DNA of 64,000 nucleotides from Haliotis cracherodii (Eukaryota), in NCBI RefSeq assembly GCF_022045235.1, contig NW_027266266.1, forward strand, positions 24,800,001 to 24,864,000, in the 5' to 3' direction. The notes beneath the pieces were generated by a model. The model was not told where the DNA came from and made no database searches. It saw only the letters and a program-made list of their open reading frames with translations. Shown piece by piece: positions 40,632-63,080 of the stretch (the stretch's first letter is position 1; every line of letters begins with the position of its first letter). Position numbers and translations under genes: made by a program.

Positions 40632-41451
40632 AGTGACATCTTGCTACCTCTTGGACCATGTGTCATATAATGATTAATTACATTCAATCATAAATACCAG
40701 ATATATTGTGCTTTTGGCAATTTTGGACCTTTCGGACGTTTTTCTACTTTTCGTACCTTTCAAACACTTTGTGCTTTTGGTTGTTTTTTTCCCCCAGAAA
40801 TGTACGCTATTTGTATTATACGTTTAAAGACGTATATTTTGATTTACACATTTTGGCACTTTCGGACAAGGTTTTAACTTCTATTTTATTTGATTAAATC
40901 GATTACCAATCAATATCAACTATTAAAGATTGTCTTTAGTTTTTAGCTCTTTTGTTTTGTCTTTTGTTAAATAACACACGATCTTGAAAATCAATCAAGC
41001 CACGCGTGGTATGTGCAGAAACCTGAATCGGTGCAAAGTCATGGTTAAAACGACTGGTTAAAATTACTGTGGCGTCTGTGCCATGTACCCGAACTAGGGC
41101 GCTATTTATCTTCAATATTGCACGGGGAGAATCAAGACAACTACATTGTTCGACACCATCGTTTATTCTCCCCAAGGGAAGCAACTCTCATCGGTACAAC
41201 ATCTTCGGTAAAGGCCAACGGGATTATCTCCCTTAAAAATACAACTATAACCGTCAGATACGGAACAAAGTTACAGCAATTGACCTCTCCGTCGAATTTT
41301 ATTGACAGCTGACTTGACCAATCAGCGAGTCGCTCTGACAGTCTGCGCACGCATACTTTGACTGTAGTCACTTCCTTAGACAAACAAGCTTGTCTAAGTT
41401 GGGCCGGCGCGCTTTACGCAATCGTTCTATCGGCCAACATATCCAGAAAAA

Positions 41452-44400
41452 ATGGTAAAGAGGTGCAGTCACGGTCTGTGCAATAGTGATGACAGGTATC
41501 CTGAACGACTTGAAGGCGGTGTCAAGTTCATACCGTTTCCAAAACCGAAGACTGACTACGAGAAGTGCCTACGGTGGATAAAACTTTGTGGGCGACCGCA
41601 TAATCAGCTCAATCCGTCAAACATCAACTGCAATAGATATGTTTGCACAAAGGTACATTTCCCGTACATTTAATCAATTTTATAGTTGGATACGTCATTT
41701 TGTTTGGCAGCGATCAGTTTTCCTATTACCATTGGCCAAGTAGTGAATATAAATTAGCTGGGTTGGTAATCGTCGAACAGATGTATAAAGATCTATGTAT
41801 ATAAAGATTTCACAAACTTATTGAAAACTTTTGAATTCATTGTGTTTATATACATTATACATCGGTTTATCCACATAATAGAGGTTTTTATGTTAAATTT
41901 GATTTTCAGCACTTCGTCAACAATTTTCCATGTGAGCAACATCCAGACCCATTACCTGCCAATCACTTTGACAAGGCTGGACTGACTAGGAAGCCCCCTA
42001 CAAAAAGAAAGCCCACTGATGATGGAACTCAGAGGTTTGTGTACACTGTAAGAAGCCATTGATTGGTTTTTTACAATTTGTTTATCAATTTACATGATCA
42101 AATACTTTGTAAAATTTCTACAGTTGATTCAGTTGTTCCATCTTGTTCACATAAGTTCGTAAATAAGATTTTCTGATCTTGTAATGAATACTGCCCAGGG
42201 GAAATGTATGTTGTTAATTTGGATGAAATAAAAATAAATGAGTTCTGCATGGAACAAACAATAAATAGGGTAGGTAGGTATGGCTTTTGTTCTTTAAATT
42301 GTTTGTTCATTTAATAAAAGTTTGATAACGAGATTGGCTAATGTGAAAATTCAGTGTTAGCCAAAAAGTTGGAGAGATTAGAAGGTAATACAGGTTGAGA
42401 TAGCACATGAGGAAATTTATTAGATGTGTTGAGTGTCTCATTAACACCCAGTATGATGTGAAATTGTTTGATAAGGTAATGTATGCATCCAGTCAGCACC
42501 TATATGGGTCACACTTTATCCTCTTTTGCTATTAAACATTGTTATATGACACTCATGCACATTATACTGTATGAACTCAAATAACAGACACACAAATATT
42601 TGATATTGGTTTAATTTTATCTTCTCAAACAACAATCAATAGTAACTTTGTAAAAGTTTATAGTTTCAAATATTATTGCAGATTGGAGCCAACAGAAAAG
42701 ATAGCTAAATCTGACAACCCATCTTTACCTTCTGCCACTGCTGTTCATACAAGTTCAAACGTGACAACAGATTGTCAGACTGACTCATGCTGTAAGTGTA
42801 CACACATTCTGAGAACTTGGCAAACACAGTACTGGTTTAACATGCTGAAAGTAAAAAGCACTCAATTCATCCAACATTTGTTGCATAAACACAGGAAGAG
42901 GAAAAATTCTTTGTATGAACAGGTCTTTTTTTGTGAAAACAACAAAGTCACAAAAGGCAGCACCTGAAATCATGAGTTGTCCTTGAACTTGATAAAAATA
43001 TTCATGATTATGGGGAGCTTTCTTGATTGAAATTATCCCATCTGTATTTTGCAAGCAGAACTTTGGCAATAAACAGCAGGCATCACTGATGGACATGTCT
43101 CGGGCTGAGTATGGACATTTTACTTCTATGATGCCTGTAATACCATCTTCACACACCTTCCCATCTGGTGTAGCTCCTAGAAATGGAAACTTTCTGTTCA
43201 CTACAAGACCACAATCATGAACATGATTACCTGACTGCTTAATGTATTTTTCAATAGCTTGTCTTTCATTACTTTTGCCATAGCTGGTTGCAGCAGATGT
43301 GAAAGCCTTTTCATTTATGATATTGTTGATGAACTTTTCTGTGATGGTTTTTCTTTTGAGTATGATCCCAAATGTGGATGCTGTCAGCCTGTGTTTCCTG
43401 GCTTGAAACCACATCTGACTGTTGGTCTGGTCCCTTGTTAGTTGCTCTAACTGTTCACATTGCTCCTGTTTCATATCCTCGATGTGGTACTCTGCTCCAA
43501 GGGTCACTGTGGCGGCCTGGGGAAAAGCTAGATTGCCACATCTAGTGCCAACAGATTTTATTGGCTCAGTCTCAAAAAACTTTGCCTGAAATAAAAAGCA
43601 AACTGACATGAGATCAAATTAACAATGTTTATTTGTCATTACATTATAACATCAATTTGTATTTGGCAGAATTGATTTCCTTTTACTTTTAAATGTTTCA
43701 GGGATCGACCCAATGGATATGATAGCACTTATTGCAGAGAATGAGAGCCTGAAGAGAGATCTGTCAACATGCAGTTTGGAGCTTATAGATGTCATGAGAA
43801 AGCTGAAAGATACTGAAGAGGAATGTGAACATCTAAAAAAGCAAAAAACATTTACTTTTTCGATTGATGTTATATTGGAAGATGCTAAGCTTATTAAGTA
43901 CTACACAGGCTTTAACAAAGAAACCTTCATTGCCATATATAGGTATTTAGTTCCAGATCCTCAATCATGTCCTCTTAGGTATCTTGGGAAAGGAAAATTG
44001 TCCAAAATTAGGAAACTTTCCCTTGAAAATCAGTTGTTTTTGACGCTTTGCAAACTGAGGAATAATTTTCACTTGCAGGATTTGGCTTTTAGATTTGCAA
44101 TTACTCAGCAAGTTGCAGGGGTTATCTTCAATTCCTGGATAAATTACATGTTTCTCAGGTTTGGTGAGGTAAGCATCTGGCCCCACAGAGATGTCTTGTA
44201 TGAAAGGATGCCAGAGGACTATAGGAAAGATTTTCCAAGTACATTTCCTATTGTTGACTGCACAGAAATTAGAATTCAAAAACCATCTTCACTAAATACC
44301 CAAACTCAAACGTACAGCAATTACAAGTCCACTAACACATTGAAGGCATTAGTGGCTGTAGATCCGAGAGGCTCAGTTATTTTTATTTCTATGCTGTTCT

Positions 44401-44789
44401 CAGGGGCAATGTCAGACAAAGAAATATTTAAGCAGTCAGGTTTTCAGTCAACACTGATTGATCTTATTGAGATTGGTTATCTGGAGGAGGGAGATGGAAT
44501 TATGGCAGATAAGGGGTTTGATATTGAAGCAGAAGTAGAGAAAACAGGGCTTCGACTGAATATACCACCATTTGCTAAGTCTGGTGTACAGATGAGCCAA
44601 AAAGATGTCACCTTCACTCAGAAGATTGCTGGGCACAGAGTACATGTCGAAAGAGCTATACGCAGAATCAAAAGTTTCAAGATTCTCAGTGGCCGCATTC
44701 AGCTATCAATGTTGTCTTCAATTGATCAAATTTGGTATGTTTGCTCTTTTCTGACAAATTTCATGCCTCCTTGTATCAGAAAGAAGTAA
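41452..44789 (+). CDS. THAP-domain Harbinger/ISL2EU DDE transposase, 4 exons, 507 aa
   Basis: Exons 41452-41652, 41910-42034, 42682-42791, 43702-44789 join in frame (1524 nt). THAP: C-x4-C...FP...W...C-T-K|H-F; then a coiled coil, an HTH region (QLFLTLCKLR...DLAFRF) and the triad VDCTE / MADKGF / RVHVERAIRRIK. Confidence 0.9.
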
Positions 44790-46927
44790 ATTGAGACACA
44801 GTACATGTAGTTGTTTTTGCAACACTGCAAAATTCTTTTTAGACCTATCATGTTATCAGGCTAAATTTGTGTTTGTACTGCATACCAAGGTTCTGCTGTC
44901 ACATGTTTGTTAGCATTGTTTGAGCTTGGGCCAAAGGTCAGATTCACAGGTAGCAATGTAAAATTACATCATTTACATAATAATAACAGTACCATATTAA
45001 ATTCAAACATAATCATGATAATACTTTTGTCAAAACTGAACCACTTGAACTATAATTTTATGTGACCTGTCACCTATTCAATTACATGAAGTGATTTTAA
45101 TCCAAACTTCCTTTCGCCCAAACACATGAAGTAATCTTAATTCCAGCTTTTCTTTGCTAGATAGGATATTGTCCCTGATTTGACCTGAGCTTATAAACAT
45201 GTAGCTTTAGCCCTATTTACCATGTCTTACTGTTACTATAGTGTTAAAACATGACAGTGTACAATGGGACCTTGATAATGGTCACACCATGTGAAAAACA
45301 TCCTCCAGTAATAATGATATAGAGTAAAATTACTGTACAAAATTCTGAATTGCTGTATAAGGAGTTTCACTATAATAGCATCCTCAATATCTATGGTGGC
45401 TACCCCTTAACAAACATGTTAAGGTTGGATATATCCAGTCATTTCCCATTGAGTTACAACATGCTTGGCAGGTAAAGGCTGTGGTCAAATTCTAACAAAC
45501 ACTAAAACCATTGCTAAACTTACATGCGTTGACAAGCCACTGCCAACAGGGACTGGTCCCACATGAGCGTGCACAGTTTTAGAGGGGTTGCAGACGAGGT
45601 ATCCAATGGGAAGGTGTTTTAGGCCTTGAAGATGTTCAACATCTGCTTCCTCGACCCGTACATTTCTGTAAAATGTAATTGTCTATCTCACTTTCTTAAT
45701 CCAGAGAACTTATTGTGAAAACGTGAAAGCTCACTTCCTTGTTGAAGTTTATCCTGTTGATGAATTCAAATGTGTCTTGTTGAAATGTAATACATTTAAG
45801 AGTGATAAACATGATAATTATGGCATCTATTTCCATTGAACATGATGATTATCATTTAGTTTATATCAATGTATATTTAGTTATGTTAATGTTTATGATA
45901 CATGTGATACCAGTGAACTTTATGTATACATTTGTTTGCTTTGAGTGAAATAAGGAAAGCATAATTCATGAAATAAATCAGTATAAATCAAGTACCTGCA
46001 TTCTGTCAATGTATTAGTAACTGGTTTCTTTTTCCTGTCTGGTTTGGGGTTGACAAAAACTAAATGTGGTACATCGCCTGCTTCAACTTTGGTACACCGA
46101 GGTTTGCTCCACTGTTCTGGAAGTGATGTACTGGACAGCTTTGATGGAACCTCAGTGAAACCCATCAACTGCCATTGCTGCAGTGCTATGATGAATCCAA
46201 TGACATGGGAACATGATCCACTAGCTCTGAAAAATTTAGTGAAATTCAAAATTGATGCTAAATCAAATTGCAAGTTTTTATAATCCATACAAATAAAACA
46301 TTAAAAAGTTCGTTGCATATTTGACAAATATATCAGATGTTAATATTGATCTTTTTTTAACAGGTGATAAGGTGTTTTTGGTATGGAGTCCAGTACTGTA
46401 AATTAACACACAATAACTTTTCTTTCGTCAGGAGATTTGAGTGAAATGTCTTTACATAAATTTATTATCATGATCATTACCTCTGGATGTAACTATTATC
46501 CTGTTAGCCTCAGTATATTGAACGAATGTATCACGAAATTAGGGAACATGATACGTTTGTATCAACAATAAATATTACGGGATAATGCATCTTGTCAACA
46601 GTAATGAGACAAACCTGGTTGTCAACGGTCAACTTACCCTGCTTGACATGAACAATAGGCATAGGAAATTTCTTCAGGCTTGATGTCAACATGAACAGCA
46701 TGGGGCGGCTCGTTTTTCTTCATACTGCGATAGCACTTGGCACTACTGACGATGGTGTCATTCTCTCCGTAAGTCATGCTTACTGAATGGAAGTACCCCT
46801 CACTAAAAAACTTAAACCCTTGCTGTTTACTTTTCATTGAAAATGACACCTGTTTCATAAAAGAAGTCGACAAATCAACCTGTAAATCCGCCAACGAAGC
46901 TCTCCGAGTTTGACAAGAGGCAGCCAT
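42785..46927 (-). CDS. SWIM zinc finger + YqaJ/lambda-exonuclease protein, 4 exons, 487 aa
   Basis: Exons 46927-46638, 46226-45996, 45665-45524, 43585-42785 join in frame (1464 nt). SWIM CSCQAG|ASGSCSH spans exons 1-2; LPEQWSKPR; YqaJ motifs WFQARKHRLTAS, FLGATPDG, IEVKCPY, YFYQVQGQL, CDFVVFT. Confidence 0.9.
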
Positions 46928-48237
46928 GTTGTTTATAAGTTTGTCTAAGGAAGTGGCGGAAAGGTCGTGACCTCTTTGAAGGCGTGGCTTAAGGTGCCAT
47001 ACGGAGAGGTCAATTGTAACCAAACTACTCGCCACATCAACCTTATCTTTTCAAAGTGAGACCACTTGAACAAAACACATTTTGAAACATTTTTATATGA
47101 ACGGGACGGACAGCACCTATTCCTATTCCTGGCGGGGAACAAAAACAACGAAACAAATGGTCTTATTATTTAAATCTTACACTGTAATAATACCGTTTTA
47201 TAAACACAAAACACTAAAACACTATGGCAATACATTGTGTGGCTCCAGAATATGTAGTGAAATGAAACTAACAGATGCAAGACTGTTTTCTTCAAAATAA
47301 ATGCTACGAACATTCATCATAAATACCTTGCACACATTTGAAGCTAAATTATAACCACCGTAATAAAACAACACCCGTGACACATGTGCTTACCTGACGT
47401 TAATGTTTTGTTGCTACCAGAGAAATATGATGCATTATCTTTAAAGTACAACAGATACATTCCCCTGAATATCCTTAAAATGGACACACAAGGATGAAGT
47501 TCCTCAACAAAATGGAACTGTTACATTTAGAAACAAGTACTAGTACTTATACTGGTAAACCTACAGTCAGTTTATGACATTCATACAATTGTATCAACCT
47601 GCAAGTTGAACTTGAAACAAGAGAACTGACACGCGACAACAAAATTGTTACTTAAATCTGAAAATACCAAAATACAAGTAGTAACCATGATAATACAATC
47701 TACAGAACAATTAATAAAATCAGAGTCTTGGATTGAATATGTCCATATCTTTGAGTGAGTGTCTTCACCCATTTGTTGTTTGTTTATTTGTTGTTTAACG
47801 CAACACTCTGCAATATTCCAACTATATACGACGGCGGTTTGTAAATAATGGAGTCTGGACCTGACAATCCAGTGATGGATATCATGAGCATCAACCAAGT
47901 CAACGAGCCAGACAACCGACAACAAGCATATTCATCTTACGTCAAGCATAGGTTGCTGAAGACCTATTCTCACCGTGATATTTACGAGTTTCAACTAGTT
48001 TTTGACACAATTGGATGAGGAAGAGACTATATGGATGTCAACTACTTCATTATGAGGATCACAACGTTTCGGAGTATATGCTTTCTCCTTCATCAGGTGT
48101 AGCAGCAGTTGAACCAGTTTACGGTACACCATCATATCATCGGTAATCAAGGTCAACTGGATTATCTCCCCTTAATTATTAACATAAATAATGAAATACG
48201 ACTATAACCATCAGAACAAAGTTGCGTCAATTATGAC

Positions 48238-52138: not shown

Positions 52139-55100
52139 AGTGACATCTTGCTACCTCTTGGACGATTTGTCAAATAATAATTAATTATATTGAATCATAA
52201 ATACAAGATGTTTTGTGCTTTTGGCAATTTTGGACACTTTGGAACATTTTTTTTTACTTTTCGTACCTTTCGGACATTTTGTGCTTTTGGCTTTTTTCAA
52301 GTACACATTCAGGCCCTTTCGAGTGTTCCGTGTCAAGATGGACGCTTGGAGTGACATCTTACTAATTCTTGGACGCTGTGTCATATAATAATTAATTACA
52401 TTCAATCATAAATACAAGATATTTTGTGCTTTTGGCAGTTTTTCTACTTTTTGGACCTTTCGGACACTTTTCACGCTTTTGGTTGTTTTTTTCCCCAGAA
52501 ATATACGCTATTTGTATTATACATTTAAAGACGTAAAGTTTGATTTACACATTTAGGCACTTTCGGACAAGGTATTAACGTCTATTTTATTTGATTAAAT
52601 CGTTACAAATCAATATTAACTATTAAAGATTGTCTTTGGCTTTTAGCCCCTTTGCTTTGTCTTTTGTTAAATAGCACACGATCTTGAAAATCAATCAAGC
52701 AACGCGTGGTATGTGCAGAAACTGCATATAACGTTTATAGCATCATATATTGTTCGTGTGGACTCATCACAACAGATAGTGACAGATTCTGACTCGATTC
52801 TTTGCATCTCTCTCAACATATTTGCTACAGCATATAACATAGACTTACAATACTAAGAGTGCCAGGTGCCCTGTTGGTACGCGGGATTCGGGGTCTATTT
52901 ACAGGGTATTCAGCAGTGTGGTACGCGGGACGCAAATAAAATCGTTTTTGATACGCAGATTCAAAATCTCTAAAATAAAAGGTGTAGGTTACAAAATCCT
53001 TTACATATCATATTTTTTTTCTGCGATTGAAGTTTAATTGCACCCTTTTCTCAATGCTTTTGAGTGTTGCAGTAAGTAGTATTCGGGATTCAGAGGTGAG
53101 CAATTGCACCCTCAATACTTGTACCACTTAGATCAATTTGTGCATACAGTCCCTGGAGTCTGTACTGAACTCCGCTAACGAAGTCACATGACTCAAATTA
53201 GATCCCAGATTAGTTCTGTCCTACTACTGCTGAACACTGGATTTGATTAAAATGGTACATAAATGACAATCATACTTTAGAGACCGTAGTGAGTAAGTTT
53301 GGTTTGACGCAGGTTACGGGCGGATACCACTAGCTCGGGTAGAGTGCTGACAGAGCAGGGGTCAATACTAAGGAGAATCCAAGATTCGAACCCACGATCA
53401 TTTGGTCCTGGTACAGTGACCGACGCAACTGCACAGATACCAAACATCCCTTGGCCACCCTGCCCCTTTGCATATTCGAAATAATGCTAGAGTAGCTGGT
53501 CCTATGTCCTAGAGTTCCTTGATGTCCTATGTAGCTGTACTAAAGAGGAGGCGCATTCATCGACTATTGGCACGAGTTTATAGAAATCTTCCGGCCATAT
53601 CACGACGATGGACATCAAGTCACTAGCTTCAAATGTAGTCTGTCTTTGAATATACGAAAGTGTGTGAATGAGTGAATGTTCTTCAGTAATATTTCAGCTA
53701 TATCAAAGAAGTCTGTAAAGTAATCGAGTCTGGACCAGGGAAACCAGTGGTTGACTGCATTAGCAACGACCCACACGGTCGAAGCACGGTCGAGTGGGGA
53801 GATTATTCCTCCCAGCAATCTCCAAATGGGGTTAGTAACTCAGGTTCCCCGTTTTATTTCTACACGATTCCATTTCAATCGCCACTGAATTGGCAGCCAA
53901 AGTTGAGACCAGTTGTTATGTTACGATATGCAAATTCGTGTAAAACGTCATAACATGTTAGGTGTATCAATATTGGATCAGACACGTGCCCTGTGTCAAA
54001 CGCTGCGTTAAATAGATAATATTGATAATGTCGCTGATTCATTTCCAGTGTGCTCAGAGAGATCGGATGACCTCGAGTTGATATACAACAGGTGAAACAC
54101 CGATTACAGATAAAGAATTTCGTCAAAAAATACTGTGTCAAATGTTGTTGGCTCATTATTGTATCACAGTAAACTTTGTTCATATATTTTTGCCGTCTGT
54201 TCACAGGAAGATCCGAAGCCAACCCCTCCACTCGCTAGTGGTGTATCACTGAGAAGCCTTCGTCCCCATCTGATGTGTATCGCGCCTGTTATAAACACGT
54301 ATCAGTGAAACGTTTAATAAAATTCTGCTGTGAATGTTAATCTGTTGTGTGCTTCTTTGTAGCTATGTTCAAATTCTTATGGTGTTATTATCACTTGAGT
54401 GAGTGGGTGAATTGGGTCTTAAGCTGCGTTTGCAAAGTGTGGAATGCAGGTCTTGAGCGCAAACAGTTTAAGTGAAACCCACGGGATTCGAACCCATGGT
54501 CATAGGATTCTTACACGCCAAAGGCGACGAACATTTGGACGTGTTGTATCCTTGGTGAATGTAAGTAAATACCAGTGGAAAGAAGGTACCTAACATTCTT
54601 TAACCAGTGATAATATAGGATTATTTTGTCAGAACATCCATCACAGCAAGTGTTCTAAAACCCGAGGACATTATTTGTTTTCAGGACACAGAATGTCAGA
54701 AAAATAATAAAAACAGTCCTTTCATATTGGAATACACTCTTCGATAAGTTAATCAGACTCGTCATTCATATAAGAGACAACTTAAATCAGTGGAAAGTCA
54801 AGGTGAAACAAATTGGTTAAAGTTGCTGTGGCGTCTGTGCCATGTACCCGTATAAGGGCGCTATTTATCTCTAATATTGCACGAGGAGAATCAAGACAAC
54901 TACATTGTTCGACACCATCGATTATTCTCCCCAAGGGAAGTAACTCTCATCGGTACACCATCTTCGGTAAAGGCCAACGGGATTATCTCCCTTAAAAATA
55001 CAACTATAACCGTCATATACGGAACAAAGTTACAGCAATTGTAACCAAACTACTCGCCACATCAACCTTATCTTTTCAAAGTGAGACCACTCGAACAAAA

Positions 55101-56263
55101 CACATTTTGAAACATTTTTATATGAACGGGACGGACAGCATCTATTCCTATTCGTGGCAGGGAATAAAATCAACTAAACAAATTATCATTTTATTTAAAT
55201 TTTACACTGTAATAATACCGTGTTATAAACACAAAACACTAAAACATTATGGCAATACATTGTGTGGCTCCAGAATATGTAGTGAAATGAAAACTAACAG
55301 AAGCAAGACTGTTTTCTTCAAAATAAATGCTACGAACATTCATCATAAATACCTTGCACACATTTGATGCTAAATAATAACCACCGTAATAAAACAACAC
55401 CCGTGGCACATGTGCTTACCTGACGTTAATGTTTTGTTGCTACCAGAGAAATATGATGCATTATCATTAAAGTACAACAAATACATTCCCGTGAATATCC
55501 TTAAAATGGACACACAAGGATGAAGTTCCTCAACAAAATGGAACTGTTACATTTAGAAACAAGTACTAGTACTTATACTGGTAAACCTACAGTCCGTTTC
55601 TGACATTCATACAATTGTATCAACCTGCAAGTTGAACTTGAAACAAGAGAACTGACACGCGACAACAAAATTGTTACTTAAATCTGAAAATACCATAATA
55701 CATGTAGTAACCATGATAATACAGTCTACAGAACAATTAATAAAATCAGAGTCTTGGATTGAATATGTCCATATCTTTGAGTGAGTGTCTTCACCCATTT
55801 GTTGTTTGTTTATTTGTTGTTTAACGCAACACTCTGCAATATTCCAACTATATACGACGGCGGTTTGTAAATAATCGAGTCTGGACCAGACAATCCAGTG
55901 ATGGATATCATGAGCATCAACCAAGTCAACGAGCCTGACAACCGACAACAAGCATATTCATCTTACGTCAAGCATAGGTTGCTGAAGACCTATTCTCACC
56001 GGGATATTTACGAGTTTCAACTAGTTTTTGACACAATTGGGTGAGGAAGAGAATATATGGATTTCAACTACTTTATTATGAGGATCACAACGTTTCGGAG
56101 TATATACTTTCTCCTTCATCAGGTGTAGCAGCAGTTGAACCAGTTTATGGTACACCATCATAACATCGGTAATCAAGGTCAACTGGATTATCTCCCCTTA
56201 ATTATTAACATAAATAATGAAATACGACTATAACCATCAGAACAAAGTTGCATCAATTATGAC

Positions 56264-60196: not shown

Positions 60197-63080
60197 AGTG
60201 ACATCTTGCTACCTCTTGGACGATGTGTCATATGATAATTAATTATATTGAATCATAAATACAAGATATTTTGTGCTTTTGGCAGTTTTGGACACTTTGG
60301 AACATTTTTTTTACTTTTCGTACCTTTCGGACATTTTGTGCTTTTGGCTTTTTTCAATTACACATTCAGGCCCTTTTGAGTGTTCCCTGTCAAGATGGAC
60401 GCTTGGAGTGACATCTTACTAATTCTTGGATGCTGTGTCATATAATAATTAATTACATTCAATCATAAATACAAGATATTTTGTGCTTTTGGCAGTTTTT
60501 CTACTTTTCGGACCTTTCGGACATTTTTCAGGCTTTTGGTTGTTTTTTTTCCCAGAAATATACGCTATTTGTATTATACGTTTAAAGACGTAAAGTTTGA
60601 TTTACACATTTAGGCACTTTTGGACAAGGTATTAACGTCTATTTTATTTGATTAAATCGATTACCAATCAATATTAACTATTAAAGATTGTCTTTAGTTT
60701 TTAGCCCCTTTACTTTGTCTTTTGTTAAATAACACACGATCTTGAAAATCAATCAAGCAACGCGTGGTATGTGCAGAAACTGCATATAACGTTTATAGCA
60801 TCATATATTGTTCGTGTGGACTCATCACAACAGATAGTGATAGATTCTGACTCGATTCTTTGCATCTCTCTCAACATATTTGCTACAGCATATAACATAG
60901 ACTTACAATACTAAGAGTGCCAGGTGCCCTCTTGGTACGCGGGTTTCGGGTTCTATGTAAAGGGTATTCAGCAGTGTGGTACGCAGGACGCAAATAAAAT
61001 CGTATTTGATACGCAGATTCAACATCTCTAAAATAAAAGGTGTAGGTTACAAAATCCTTTACATATCATATTTTTTTCTGTGATTAGTTCTTTAATTGCA
61101 CCCTTTTCTCAATGCTTTTGACTGTTGCGGTAAGTAGTATTCGAGATTCAGGGGTGAGCAATTGCACCCTCAATACTTGTACCACTAAGATCAATTTGTG
61201 CATACAGTCCTTGGAGTCTGTACTGAACTCCGCTAACGAAGTCACATGACTCAAATTAGATCCCAGATTAGTTCTGTCCTACTACTGCTGAACACTGGAT
61301 TTGATTAAAATGGTACATAAATGACAATCATAATTTAGAGACCGTAGTGAGTAAGTTTGGTTAAATGCGGCTTTGACGCAGGTTACAGGCGGATACCACT
61401 AGCACGGGTAGAGTGCTGACAGAGCAGGGGTCAATACCAAGGAGAATCCAAGATTCGAACCCACGATCATTTGGTCCTGGTACAGTGACCGACGCAAATG
61501 CACAGATACCAAACATCCCTTGGCCACCCTGCCCCTTTGCATATTCGAAATAATGCTAGAGTAGCTGTTTCTAAGTCTTAGAGTTCCTTGATTTCCTATG
61601 TAGCTGTACTAAAGAGGAGGCGCATTCATCGACTATTAGGATGAGTTTATAGAAATCTTCCGGCCATATCACGACGATGGACATCAAGTCACTAGCTTCA
61701 AATGTAGTCTGTCTTTGAATATACGAAAGTGTGTGAGTGAGTGAATGTTCTTCAGTAATATTTCAGCTATATCAAAGAAGTCTGTAAAGTAATCGAGTCT
61801 GGACCAGGGAAACCAGTGGTTGACTGCATTAGCAACGACCCACACGGTCGAAGCACGGTCGAGTGGGGGGGATTATTCTACCCAGCAATCTCCAAGTGGG
61901 GTTAGTAACTCAGGTTCCCAGTTTTATTTCTACACGATTCCATTTGAATTGCCACTGAATTGGCAGCCAAAGTTGAGACCAGTTTTTATGTTACGATATG
62001 CAAATTCGTGTAAAACGTCACAACATGTCAGTTAGTGTATCAATATTGGATCAGATATGTGTCCTGTGTCAAACGCTGCGTTAAATAGATAATATTGATA
62101 ATGTCGCTGATTCATTTCCAGTGTGTTCAGAGAGATCGGATGACCTCGAGTTGATATACAACAGGCGAAACACCGATTACAGATAAAGAATTTCGTCAAA
62201 AAATACTGTGTCAAATGTTGTCGGCTCACTATTGTATCACAGTTAACTTTGTTCATATATTTTTGCCGTCTGTTCACAGGAAGATCCGAAGCCAACCCCT
62301 CCACTCGCTAGTGGTGTATCACTGAGAAGCCTTCGTCCCCATCTGATGTGTATCGCGCCTGTTATAAACACGTATCAGTGAAACGTTTAATAAAATTCTG
62401 CTGTGAATGTTAATCTGTTGTGTGCTTCTTTGTAGCTCTGTTCAAATTCTTATGGTGTTATTATCACTTGAGTGAGTGGGTGAATTGGGTCTTAAGCTGC
62501 GTTTGCAAAGTGTGGAATGCAGGTCTTGGGCGCTAACAGTTTAAGTGAAACCCACGGGATTCGAACCCATGGTCATAGGATTCTTACACGCCAAAGGCGA
62601 CGAATATTTGGACGTGTTGTATCCTTGTTGAATGTAAGTAAATACCAGTGGAAAGAAGGTACCTAACATTCTTTAACCAGTGATAATATAGGATTATTTT
62701 GTCAGAACATCCATCACAGCAAGTGTTCTAAAACCCGAGGACATTATTTGTTTTCAGGACACAGAATGTCAGAAAAATAATAAAAACAGTCCTTTCATAT
62801 TGGAATACACTCTTCGATAAGTTAATCAGACTCGTCATTCATATAAGAGACAACTTAAATCGGTGGAAAGTCATGGTGAAACAAACTGGTTAAAGTTGCT
62901 GAGGCGTCTGTGTCATGTACCCGTATTAGGACGCTTTTTATCTCTAATATTGCACGAGGAGAATCAAGACAACTACATTGTTCGACACCATCGATTATTC
63001 TCCCCAAGGGAAGTAACTCTCATCGGTACACCATCTTCGGTAAAGGCCAACGGGATTATCTCCCTTAAAAATACAACTAT

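What the first reader, a model, noticed from the sequence alone, without database searches (positions are those of the whole stretch)
41281..47012. Intact transposon with two mutually nested (interdigitated) antisense genes
Seen: the transposase (+) and the SWIM-YqaJ exonuclease (-) are transcribed inward from opposite ends and cross over. The whole YqaJ catalytic exon (43585-42785) lies in transposase intron 3 (42792-43701), with its last 7 nt overlapping transposase exon 3. The whole DDE catalytic exon (43702-44789) lies in YqaJ intron 3 (45523-43586). The two final acceptors sit back to back in a 116-bp gap. Both spliced frames are open. Established: ISL2EU elements pair a Harbinger-like transposase with a YqaJ exonuclease. 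Inference: each pre-mRNA or excised intron is a 0.8-1.1 kb antisense to the other gene's catalytic exon while the mature coding sequences barely overlap. This could be a built-in mutual-exclusion or self-silencing switch (polymerase collision, dsRNA), and it links the two genes against separate deletion. I cannot tell whether this layout is already described.
Basis: partly seen in the sequence, partly recalled or inferred. Interest (0 to 1): 0.8.

Follow-up and report, generated by a model that had tools for sequence, protein, structure and literature searches.

The report
Transposon with two interleaved antisense genes
This is an intact, recently active ISL2EU "jumping gene" of an abalone-like genome whose two genes run towards each other and have swapped last exons, so each must be spliced across the other; transcripts confirm it, and a whole branch of this transposon group shares the layout, but no regulatory role is shown.

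Summary
Window 41281-47012 is a 5732-bp ISL2EU transposon. It has 12-nt terminal inverted repeats, an AT target duplication and an empty paralogous site in the same window. At least eight copies in this genome are 99.4-99.6% identical. Transcript contigs from three organisms show all six predicted GT..AG junctions. The THAP-HTH-DDE transposase (+, 507 aa) and the SWIM-like/YqaJ nuclease (-, 487 aa) are therefore truly interleaved. Each catalytic last exon lies in the other gene's last intron, and the two acceptors sit back to back 116 bp apart.

New here: the layout is not peculiar to this family. Every informative relative fetched from metagenomes (15 contigs, 40-54% DDE identity) has the same crossed order, and a scallop gene model contains an antisense-YqaJ exon. 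All of these fall in one DDE clade with 100/99 support. At least nine other ISL2EU lineages in this same genome (57 gene pairs) keep the plain tail-to-tail order.

Both spliced mRNAs occur in the same libraries. Conservation can be explained by inheritance alone. The "protection against separate deletion" argument is weak. I found no description of this gene order in the searchable literature.

The parts
41279..41280 (.). left copy of the AT target-site duplication
   Evidence: filled versus empty site; flanks of 9 copies
41281..41292 (+). left terminal inverted repeat TGACCTCTCCGT
   Evidence: I19, 16 nt perfect including the flank; copy boundaries
41369..41385 (.). 17-nt subterminal repeat, a perfect inverted partner of 46939-46955; it lies in the 5' region of the transposase gene
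   Evidence: I13, 100% complementary
41452..41652 (+). transposase exon 1 (start codon, THAP zinc finger)
   Evidence: Pfam THAP; junction 41652/41910 in runs X1 and X2
41910..42034 (+). transposase exon 2 (end of THAP, basic linker)
   Evidence: junctions; frame
42682..42791 (+). transposase exon 3 (linker); its last 7 nt overlap the end of the YqaJ coding sequence, and the whole exon probably lies under the YqaJ 3'UTR
   Evidence: junction 42034/42682 (X1, X2, X5) and 42791/43702 (X7); P0001 model
43702..44789 (+). transposase exon 4 (coiled linker, HTH_Tnp_4, DDE_Tnp_4 catalytic domain, stop); lies inside YqaJ intron 3
   Evidence: intact in 8 copies
44996..45001 (+). candidate poly(A) signal ATTAAA of the transposase mRNA, inside YqaJ intron 3
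   Evidence: motif only; the 3' end was not mapped
46638..46927 (-). nuclease gene exon 1 (start codon; first half of the CxC...CxH SWIM-like motif)
   Evidence: junction 46638/46226 in 4 runs; frame
45996..46226 (-). nuclease gene exon 2 (second half of the SWIM-like motif)
   Evidence: the motif is contiguous in the intron-less homologue L044
45524..45665 (-). nuclease gene exon 3
   Evidence: junctions 45996/45665 and 45524/43585
42785..43585 (-). nuclease gene exon 4 (YqaJ/alkaline-exonuclease domain, stop); lies inside transposase intron 3
   Evidence: intact in 8 copies
42610..42615 (-). candidate poly(A) signal ATTAAA of the nuclease mRNA, inside transposase intron 2
   Evidence: depth step at about 42600
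43586..43701 (.). 116-bp spacer holding the two 3' splice sites back to back (CTG...CAG)
   Evidence: the same arrangement with 30-130 bp spacers in L015, L016, L017, L020 and L025
46939..46955 (.). 17-nt subterminal repeat, partner of 41369-41385, just upstream of the nuclease start codon
   Evidence: I13
47001..47012 (-). right terminal inverted repeat
47013..47014 (.). right copy of the AT target-site duplication
55037..55040 (.). paralogous empty target site A|AT|T in a neighbouring repeat unit

Best explanation
What it is. This is an autonomous, recently active ISL2EU (PHIS superfamily) cut-and-paste DNA transposon. Its two genes are transcribed inward from the two ends and are interleaved.

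How it is expressed. The transposase pre-mRNA (+) reads through the antisense of the nuclease's YqaJ exon and removes it as part of intron 3. The nuclease pre-mRNA (-) reads through the antisense of the DDE exon and removes it as part of its own intron 3. The two final 3' splice sites face away from each other across a short spacer. These points are shown by spliced transcript contigs.

Where the layout comes from. It is an inherited architecture of one ISL2EU clade. It most probably arose once, from the plain tail-to-tail order, by a swap of the two central exon blocks. The polarity and the mechanism of that swap are inferred.

Its certain consequence. The two primary transcripts share about 2.4-2.9 kb of obligatory sense/antisense overlap. 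The mature mRNAs probably share about 110-190 nt.

My most likely reading of function. The layout is a tolerated, frozen rearrangement. It does not prevent expression or transposition. Any regulatory use of the antisense overlap is possible but not shown.
For: Transposon identity:
- Terminal inverted repeats, AT duplication, A|AT|T target and an empty site.
- At least 8 full copies on different contigs, 99.4-99.6% identical, with both catalytic exons open.
- Domain set THAP+HTH+DDE_Tnp_4 and YqaJ, which matches the published ISL2EU definition (PMC4482050, PMC4122938).

Interleaving:
- All six canonical junctions are present in contigs of runs X1, X2, X5 and X7.
- The H. rufescens model P0001 uses the exon 3/4 junction.

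Clade-wide conservation:
- YqaJ(-) lies directly upstream of DDE(+) in L015, L016, L017, L020, L021, L025 and L029.
- SWIM exons (-) lie directly downstream of DDE in 12 contigs.
- The scallop model P0034 carries a translated antisense-YqaJ segment.
- A second, degenerate crossed family is present in this genome (L049).
- Back-to-back acceptors are conserved.
- All crossed rows fall in one clade with 100/99 support, and all uncrossed rows fall outside it.

Contrast: 57 DDE/YqaJ pairs of other families in this genome are uncrossed.
Against: - The runs are only guessed to be RNA. Contigs give no strand or level, and unspliced contigs are also present.
- The tree is midpoint-rooted only. An outgroup could not be fetched, so 'crossed is derived' is an inference.
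- No relics of a duplication intermediate were found.
- The metagenome loci were found with patterns taken from close relatives, so they sample mainly this clade.
- Long conservation of the short acceptor spacer could also mean selection for the layout. That would favour a functional reading.
Confidence: 0.85

Rival explanations
1. The crossed layout is a built-in regulatory device. Convergent transcription over the two catalytic exons causes polymerase collision and/or double-stranded RNA. The element then either expresses the two genes in a mutually exclusive way or silences itself through siRNA or piRNA.
For: - Obligatory antisense overlap of about 2.4-2.9 kb at the pre-mRNA level, and of transposase exon 3 with the nuclease 3'UTR at the mRNA level.
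- The layout and the tight back-to-back acceptor spacer are kept over 40-54% protein divergence.
- Nuclease exons show several-fold higher contig depth than transposase exons (a weak measure).
Against: - There is no direct evidence.
- Both spliced mRNAs are present in the same libraries.
- The family is highly successful, with 8 near-identical copies.
- A rare rearrangement persists by descent without any selection.
- The 7-nt coding overlap is not conserved.
- Uncrossed ISL2EU families thrive in the same genome.
Confidence: 0.2
2. The two catalytic ORFs are separate single-exon genes with internal promoters, and the distal THAP and SWIM exons are unrelated. Under this reading there is no true interleaving.
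For: Each catalytic exon has an in-frame ATG near its start (43713 on the + strand; 43609 on the - strand). Many database proteins consist of the DDE part alone.
Against: - Spliced contigs join the distal exons to the catalytic exons on both strands, with canonical sites.
- Frames stay open across the junctions.
- Full-length THAP-DDE proteins exist in relatives (P0014, P0025, P0043).
- The SWIM-like motif is contiguous with YqaJ in the intron-less homologue L044.
Confidence: 0.04
3. The crossed order is an assembly or annotation artefact, or belongs to one rearranged dead copy.
For: None beyond general caution.
Against: - The same order is seen in 8 near-identical copies on 7 contigs and in older copies 90-96% identical.
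- It is seen in contigs of three coded organisms.
- It is seen in 15 independent metagenome contigs.
Confidence: 0.01

Closest known systems
[quoted passage not shown] 2014, PMC4122938; Han et al. 2015, PMC4482050)
   Same: THAP-HTH-DDE transposase, a second gene with a YqaJ exonuclease domain, A|AT|T target with an AT duplication, short terminal inverted repeats, length about 5 kb, animal host.
   Different: The papers describe 'two ORFs' and give no relative order, orientation or exon structure. Here the two genes are interleaved. The inverted repeat starts with TG, not the 'usual' GG.
Uncrossed ISL2EU families of the same genome (for example L036, L039, L044)
   Same: The same two genes, convergent, with the same domains.
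   Different: The order is THAP > DDE > < YqaJ < SWIM. The catalytic parts sit tail to tail, 650-3000 bp apart. The nuclease is often one long ORF (690 aa in L044). No exon of one gene lies inside the other gene.
MuDR of maize (mudrA and mudrB transcribed convergently from the two terminal repeats); cited from my own knowledge, not checked here
   Same: A DNA transposon with two genes transcribed inward from promoters at the two ends.
   Different: The MuDR genes lie side by side and are not interleaved, and the second gene is unrelated to YqaJ.
Nested and 'interleaved' host gene pairs of animal genomes (for example Drosophila nested genes, PMC3814207, PMC5174743)
   Same: Exons of one gene lie in introns of another on the opposite strand, and transcriptional interference has been discussed for such pairs.
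   Different: Those are host gene pairs, mostly one-way nesting of a young gene in a long intron. Here the nesting is mutual, it sits inside a 5.7-kb mobile element, and it joins two proteins of one transposition system.

Membership tests
ISL2EU (PHIS superfamily) | DDE transposase of the IS5/Harbinger type (DDE_Tnp_4) with an HTH | tested here: met
   PF13359 E 2.2e-47 and PF13613 E 3e-14 on 43713-44789
ISL2EU (PHIS superfamily) | THAP zinc finger at the N-terminus of the transposase | tested here: met
   PF05485, 26.1 bits against a cut-off of 23.9, on exon 1; joined to the DDE exon by three spliced junctions
ISL2EU (PHIS superfamily) | [quoted passage not shown] | tested here: met
   PF09588 E 5e-16 on 43609-42785, - strand
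ISL2EU (PHIS superfamily) | 2-bp AT target-site duplication within an A|AT|T target | tested here: met
   Empty versus filled site. Seven of the eight copies with both flanks shown have aAT...ATt. Copy L003 does not match.
ISL2EU (PHIS superfamily) | terminal inverted repeats, 'usually' starting with GG | tested here: not met
   Inverted repeats are present (12 nt) but start with TG. The published feature is only 'usual', so this does not exclude membership.
ISL2EU (PHIS superfamily) | transposase groups with reference ISL2EU transposases (Repbase) in a phylogeny | not testable with these tools
   No Repbase or Dfam sequences were available. Relatives found are unnamed or 'uncharacterized'.
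Spy group (PHIS) | insertion between AAA and TTT without a target duplication; a single ORF | tested here: not met
   There are two genes. The flanks are aAT/ATt, not AAA/TTT. A zero-duplication reading of the palindromic site cannot be excluded from L001 alone, but the domain set argues for ISL2EU.
Interleaved (mutually nested) gene pair | each gene has at least one exon inside an intron of the other, shown by transcripts | tested here: met
   Junctions 42791/43702 (+) and 45524/43585 (-) bracket each other's last exon

The most novel reading that the evidence does not exclude
The crossed gene order is a selected, self-limiting control circuit of one ISL2EU clade. Convergent transcription through both catalytic exons would produce nuclear double-stranded RNA, or polymerase interference, that sets the ratio of transposase to nuclease or feeds the host's small-RNA silencing. 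That would explain why the order and the tight back-to-back acceptor module have been kept across phyla.
Probability: 0.2. Interest if true: 0.75.

Novelty: new variant of a known kind. Interest (0 to 1): 0.5.

Why it matters
ISL2EU elements are known, but the role of their YqaJ nuclease and the control of their two genes are open questions (PMC4482050). This work gives three things.

- A transcript-verified case of two transposon genes that are mutually nested on opposite strands.
- Evidence that this is the conserved architecture of a whole clade found in molluscs and other marine animals.
- A natural control. The same genome carries crossed and uncrossed ISL2EU families, so the effect of the layout on expression, small RNAs and copy number can be tested directly.

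It also has a practical side for annotation. Gene predictors can mistake the antisense of the YqaJ exon for a transposase exon, as in the scallop model P0034.

Tried and rejected
I could not fetch the loci of the named relatives: pipefish P0006, Pinctada P0011, Argopecten P0014, Glandiceps P0025, Dreissena P0043.
- The viral-contig scan found no relative.
The polarity of the rearrangement is therefore inferred.
- I looked for relics of a tandem-duplication intermediate by running blastx of all non-exonic segments against the exon proteins. Only chance hits came back, all at E above 0.2.
- I tested whether the 7-nt stop/donor overlap is conserved. It is not in L015, L016, L017, L020 and L025.
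- Pfam does not call a SWIM domain, either in the single exons or in the intron-less homologue. Only the CxCx7CxH motif supports the name.
- I never joined the exons into a spliced protein for any search or fold. Only the four split codons were read, one at a time.
- The Spy reading (no target duplication) was considered because the site CAATTG is palindromic. I rejected it on the gene content and on the flanks of the other copies.
- Literature searches for the gene order found nothing. Repbase and Dfam could not be consulted.
Full report
**The element**

Window 41281-47012 (5732 bp) carries ORFs with these Pfam domains:
- + strand: THAP (41452-41673), and HTH_Tnp_4 plus DDE_Tnp_4 (43713-44789, E 2e-47).
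- - strand: YqaJ (43609-42785, E 5e-16).

It ends in perfect inverted repeats, TGACCTCTCCGT / ACGGAGAGGTCA.

A search of the window's own genome found seven more full-length copies plus one lacking its first 130 bp, on seven contigs. They are 99.4-99.6% identical to this copy. In all eight copies, this one included, both catalytic exons are free of stops. Older copies 90-96% identical also exist.

The flanks of this copy lie next to each other, without the element, in neighbouring units of a tandem array on the same chromosome. One such empty site is in the window itself (GTTACAGCAATTGTAACC, target at 55037-55040).

The flanks of the other copies read aAT|TGACC...GGTCA|ATt. This is the A|AT|T target and AT duplication published for ISL2EU (PMC4482050). 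The published ISL2EU definition is a THAP-HTH-DDE transposase plus a second gene with a YqaJ domain (PMC4482050, PMC4122938). It is met on every point except the 'usual' GG start of the inverted repeats.

The best protein hit of the DDE exon is a Haliotis rufescens protein at 97% identity. The genome is therefore an abalone or a close relative. This is an inference.

**The interleaving is real**

I laid the contigs of four public runs on 41200-47100. The runs are coded as organisms A, B and C and are only guessed to be RNA. They show joints at exactly the six predicted introns, each with canonical ends:
- 41653-41909, 42035-42681 and 42792-43701: GT..AG.
- 46637-46227, 45995-45666 and 45523-43586: CT..AC on the + strand, so GT..AG on the - strand.

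Six canonical introns on two strands cannot come from genomic DNA of the collinear copies seen. These contigs therefore derive from spliced RNA.

The exon phases give open frames:
- Transposase, 507 aa: exons 41452-41652, 41910-42034, 42682-42791, 43702-44789.
- Nuclease, 487 aa: exons 46927-46638, 46226-45996, 45665-45524, 43585-42785.
- The split codons read R, W, G and R.

Two independent checks agree:
- The NCBI model P0001 of H. rufescens reads ...TDCQTDSC-W-IDPMDM..., the same exon 3/4 junction.
- The motif CxCx7CxH spans the nuclease exon 1/2 junction here. It is contiguous (CDCKAGLGESCSH) in an intron-less homologue of the same genome (L044).

So the YqaJ exon lies in transposase intron 3, and the DDE exon lies in nuclease intron 3. 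The two 3' splice sites face away from each other across 116 bp (43586-43701).

The nuclease poly(A) signal (ATTAAA at 42615) and the step in contig depth near 42600 suggest this UTR covers the whole of transposase exon 3. The mature mRNAs would then overlap by about 110 nt or more, not only by the 7 coding nucleotides.

**The layout is not routine for ISL2EU, but it is the rule for one clade**

In the same genome I paired all DDE-exon and YqaJ-exon matches:
- In the 12 copies or fragments of this family, the YqaJ exon lies upstream of the DDE exon on the opposite strand (crossed).
- In 57 pairs from other families (27-50% identity), it lies downstream, tail to tail, 650-3000 bp away.
- Two apparent exceptions were resolved. 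One is a neighbouring element. The other, L049, is a degenerate member of a second crossed family.

Mapping single exons on 20 fetched loci confirmed the plain order SWIM > YqaJ > < DDE < THAP in at least nine distinct lineages. Some of these have a single 690-aa nuclease ORF.

Outside this genome, a metagenome scan with an alignment of relatives gave 22 contigs. Every informative one is crossed:
- YqaJ(-) lies directly upstream of DDE(+) in L015, L016, L017, L020, L021, L025 and L029.
- SWIM exons (-) lie directly downstream of DDE, with no room for a YqaJ exon between, in L014, L019, L023, L026, L027, L028, L030 and L031.
- L017 holds the whole set within 4.8 kb, with Pfam domains confirmed.

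A Gnomon model from the scallop Ylistrum balloti (P0034) contains a segment just before its DDE part that is the translation of the antisense of a YqaJ exon. It is 49% identical to the window's + strand ORF 43023-43220, pairwise E 2e-11. That element is therefore crossed too.

The back-to-back acceptor module (CTG...CAG) is conserved. Its spacers are as short as about 30-35 bp in L016 and L017, where the two polypyrimidine tracts are each other's complement.

**Phylogeny**

I built a maximum-likelihood tree of 28 DDE sequences. All crossed rows fall in one clade with 100/99 support, together with relatives of unknown layout: pipefish, Pinctada, Argopecten, Glandiceps, Dreissena and L013. Every uncrossed row lies outside it.

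The simplest reading is a single origin of the crossed order. The root is a midpoint only, because an outgroup could not be fetched. 'Derived from the uncrossed order' is therefore an inference, resting on the uncrossed order being simpler and present in several deep lineages.

A swap of two adjacent blocks without a change of strand could come from two routes. One is a tandem duplication of [DDE> <YqaJ] followed by reciprocal loss. The other is aberrant gap repair. I found no relics of such an intermediate, which is expected at this divergence.

**How it works, and what is not shown**

Shown:
- Both genes are transcribed inward and spliced across each other.
- Both spliced forms occur in the same libraries.

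Follows from the geometry:
- The two primary transcripts are complementary over roughly 42600-45000 or beyond.
- Each gene's poly(A) signal lies in an intron of the other.

Not shown: any regulatory effect. Three points weigh against a functional reading.
- Conservation of a rare rearrangement needs no selection.
- The family is thriving.
- Uncrossed families thrive in the same genome.

One point weighs the other way. The tight conserved acceptor spacer, and the persistence of the layout over 40-54% protein identity, leave room for function.

Its 'linkage against separate deletion' argument is weak. Each catalytic exon sits in an intron of the other gene and could be lost alone.

**Novelty**

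The element is a new member of a known group. The interleaved architecture and its clade-wide conservation are not described in any paper I could search. Repbase curators and RefSeq models have probably seen it without describing it.

**Limits**

- Only one reads call was available, so there are no stranded, small-RNA or transcript-end data.

Noticed in passing
window 26020-26179, 54959-55125, 63032-63080, and further units downstream on the same chromosome: The element sits in one unit of a tandem array with units roughly 8-17 kb apart. Its two flanks are adjacent, without the element, in at least eight other units, which gives several paralogous empty sites.
   Followed up: partly
L003 (G000:C12:15993333-15999067): One of the 99.5%-identical copies lacks the matching AT duplication. 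Its flanks read ...gtatt|TGACC and GGTCA|aagaaac. It may have arisen by recombination between copies, by a flank deletion, or by an aberrant insertion.
   Followed up: no
P0006 (Syngnathoides biaculeatus, pipefish); A fish protein is 68% identical to the abalone DDE exon and is its sister in the tree (99/96), closer than the bivalve relatives. This may reflect horizontal transfer of this ISL2EU lineage between marine animals.
   Followed up: no
window 41369-41385 and 46939-46955: A perfect 17-nt inverted pair (CACTTCCTTAGACAAAC) lies about 90 bp from the left end and about 60 bp from the right end, just upstream of both start codons. It is a candidate shared promoter element or transposase-binding site.
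   Followed up: no
P0034 (Ylistrum balloti gene model), residues 165-218: An automatic gene model has taken the antisense of a YqaJ exon as a coding exon of the transposase. This is an annotation hazard for crossed ISL2EU elements.
   Followed up: yes
P0001 (Haliotis rufescens isoform X2); corresponds to window about 42018-42049: The model starts at an ATG inside exon 2 in another frame, and uses a donor 15 nt downstream of the main one. The result is a transposase without the THAP domain. If real, it could be a truncated, non-DNA-binding isoform.
   Followed up: no
L049 (G000:C12:59874000-59883999): A degenerate element of a second family (37% DDE and 36% YqaJ identity, with stops) shows the same crossed order: THAP, YqaJ antisense, DDE, SWIM antisense.
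   Followed up: partly
window 43581/45520, run X2: A minor alternative joint with non-canonical ends (TT..AC) is shifted by 3 nt from the main nuclease intron 3 junction. It may be a variant copy or an assembly effect.
   Followed up: no
L031 1905-2106: A THAP exon on the minus strand lies about 300 bp beyond the SWIM exon 1 of a crossed element. This suggests a second element abutting it in inverted orientation.
   Followed up: no
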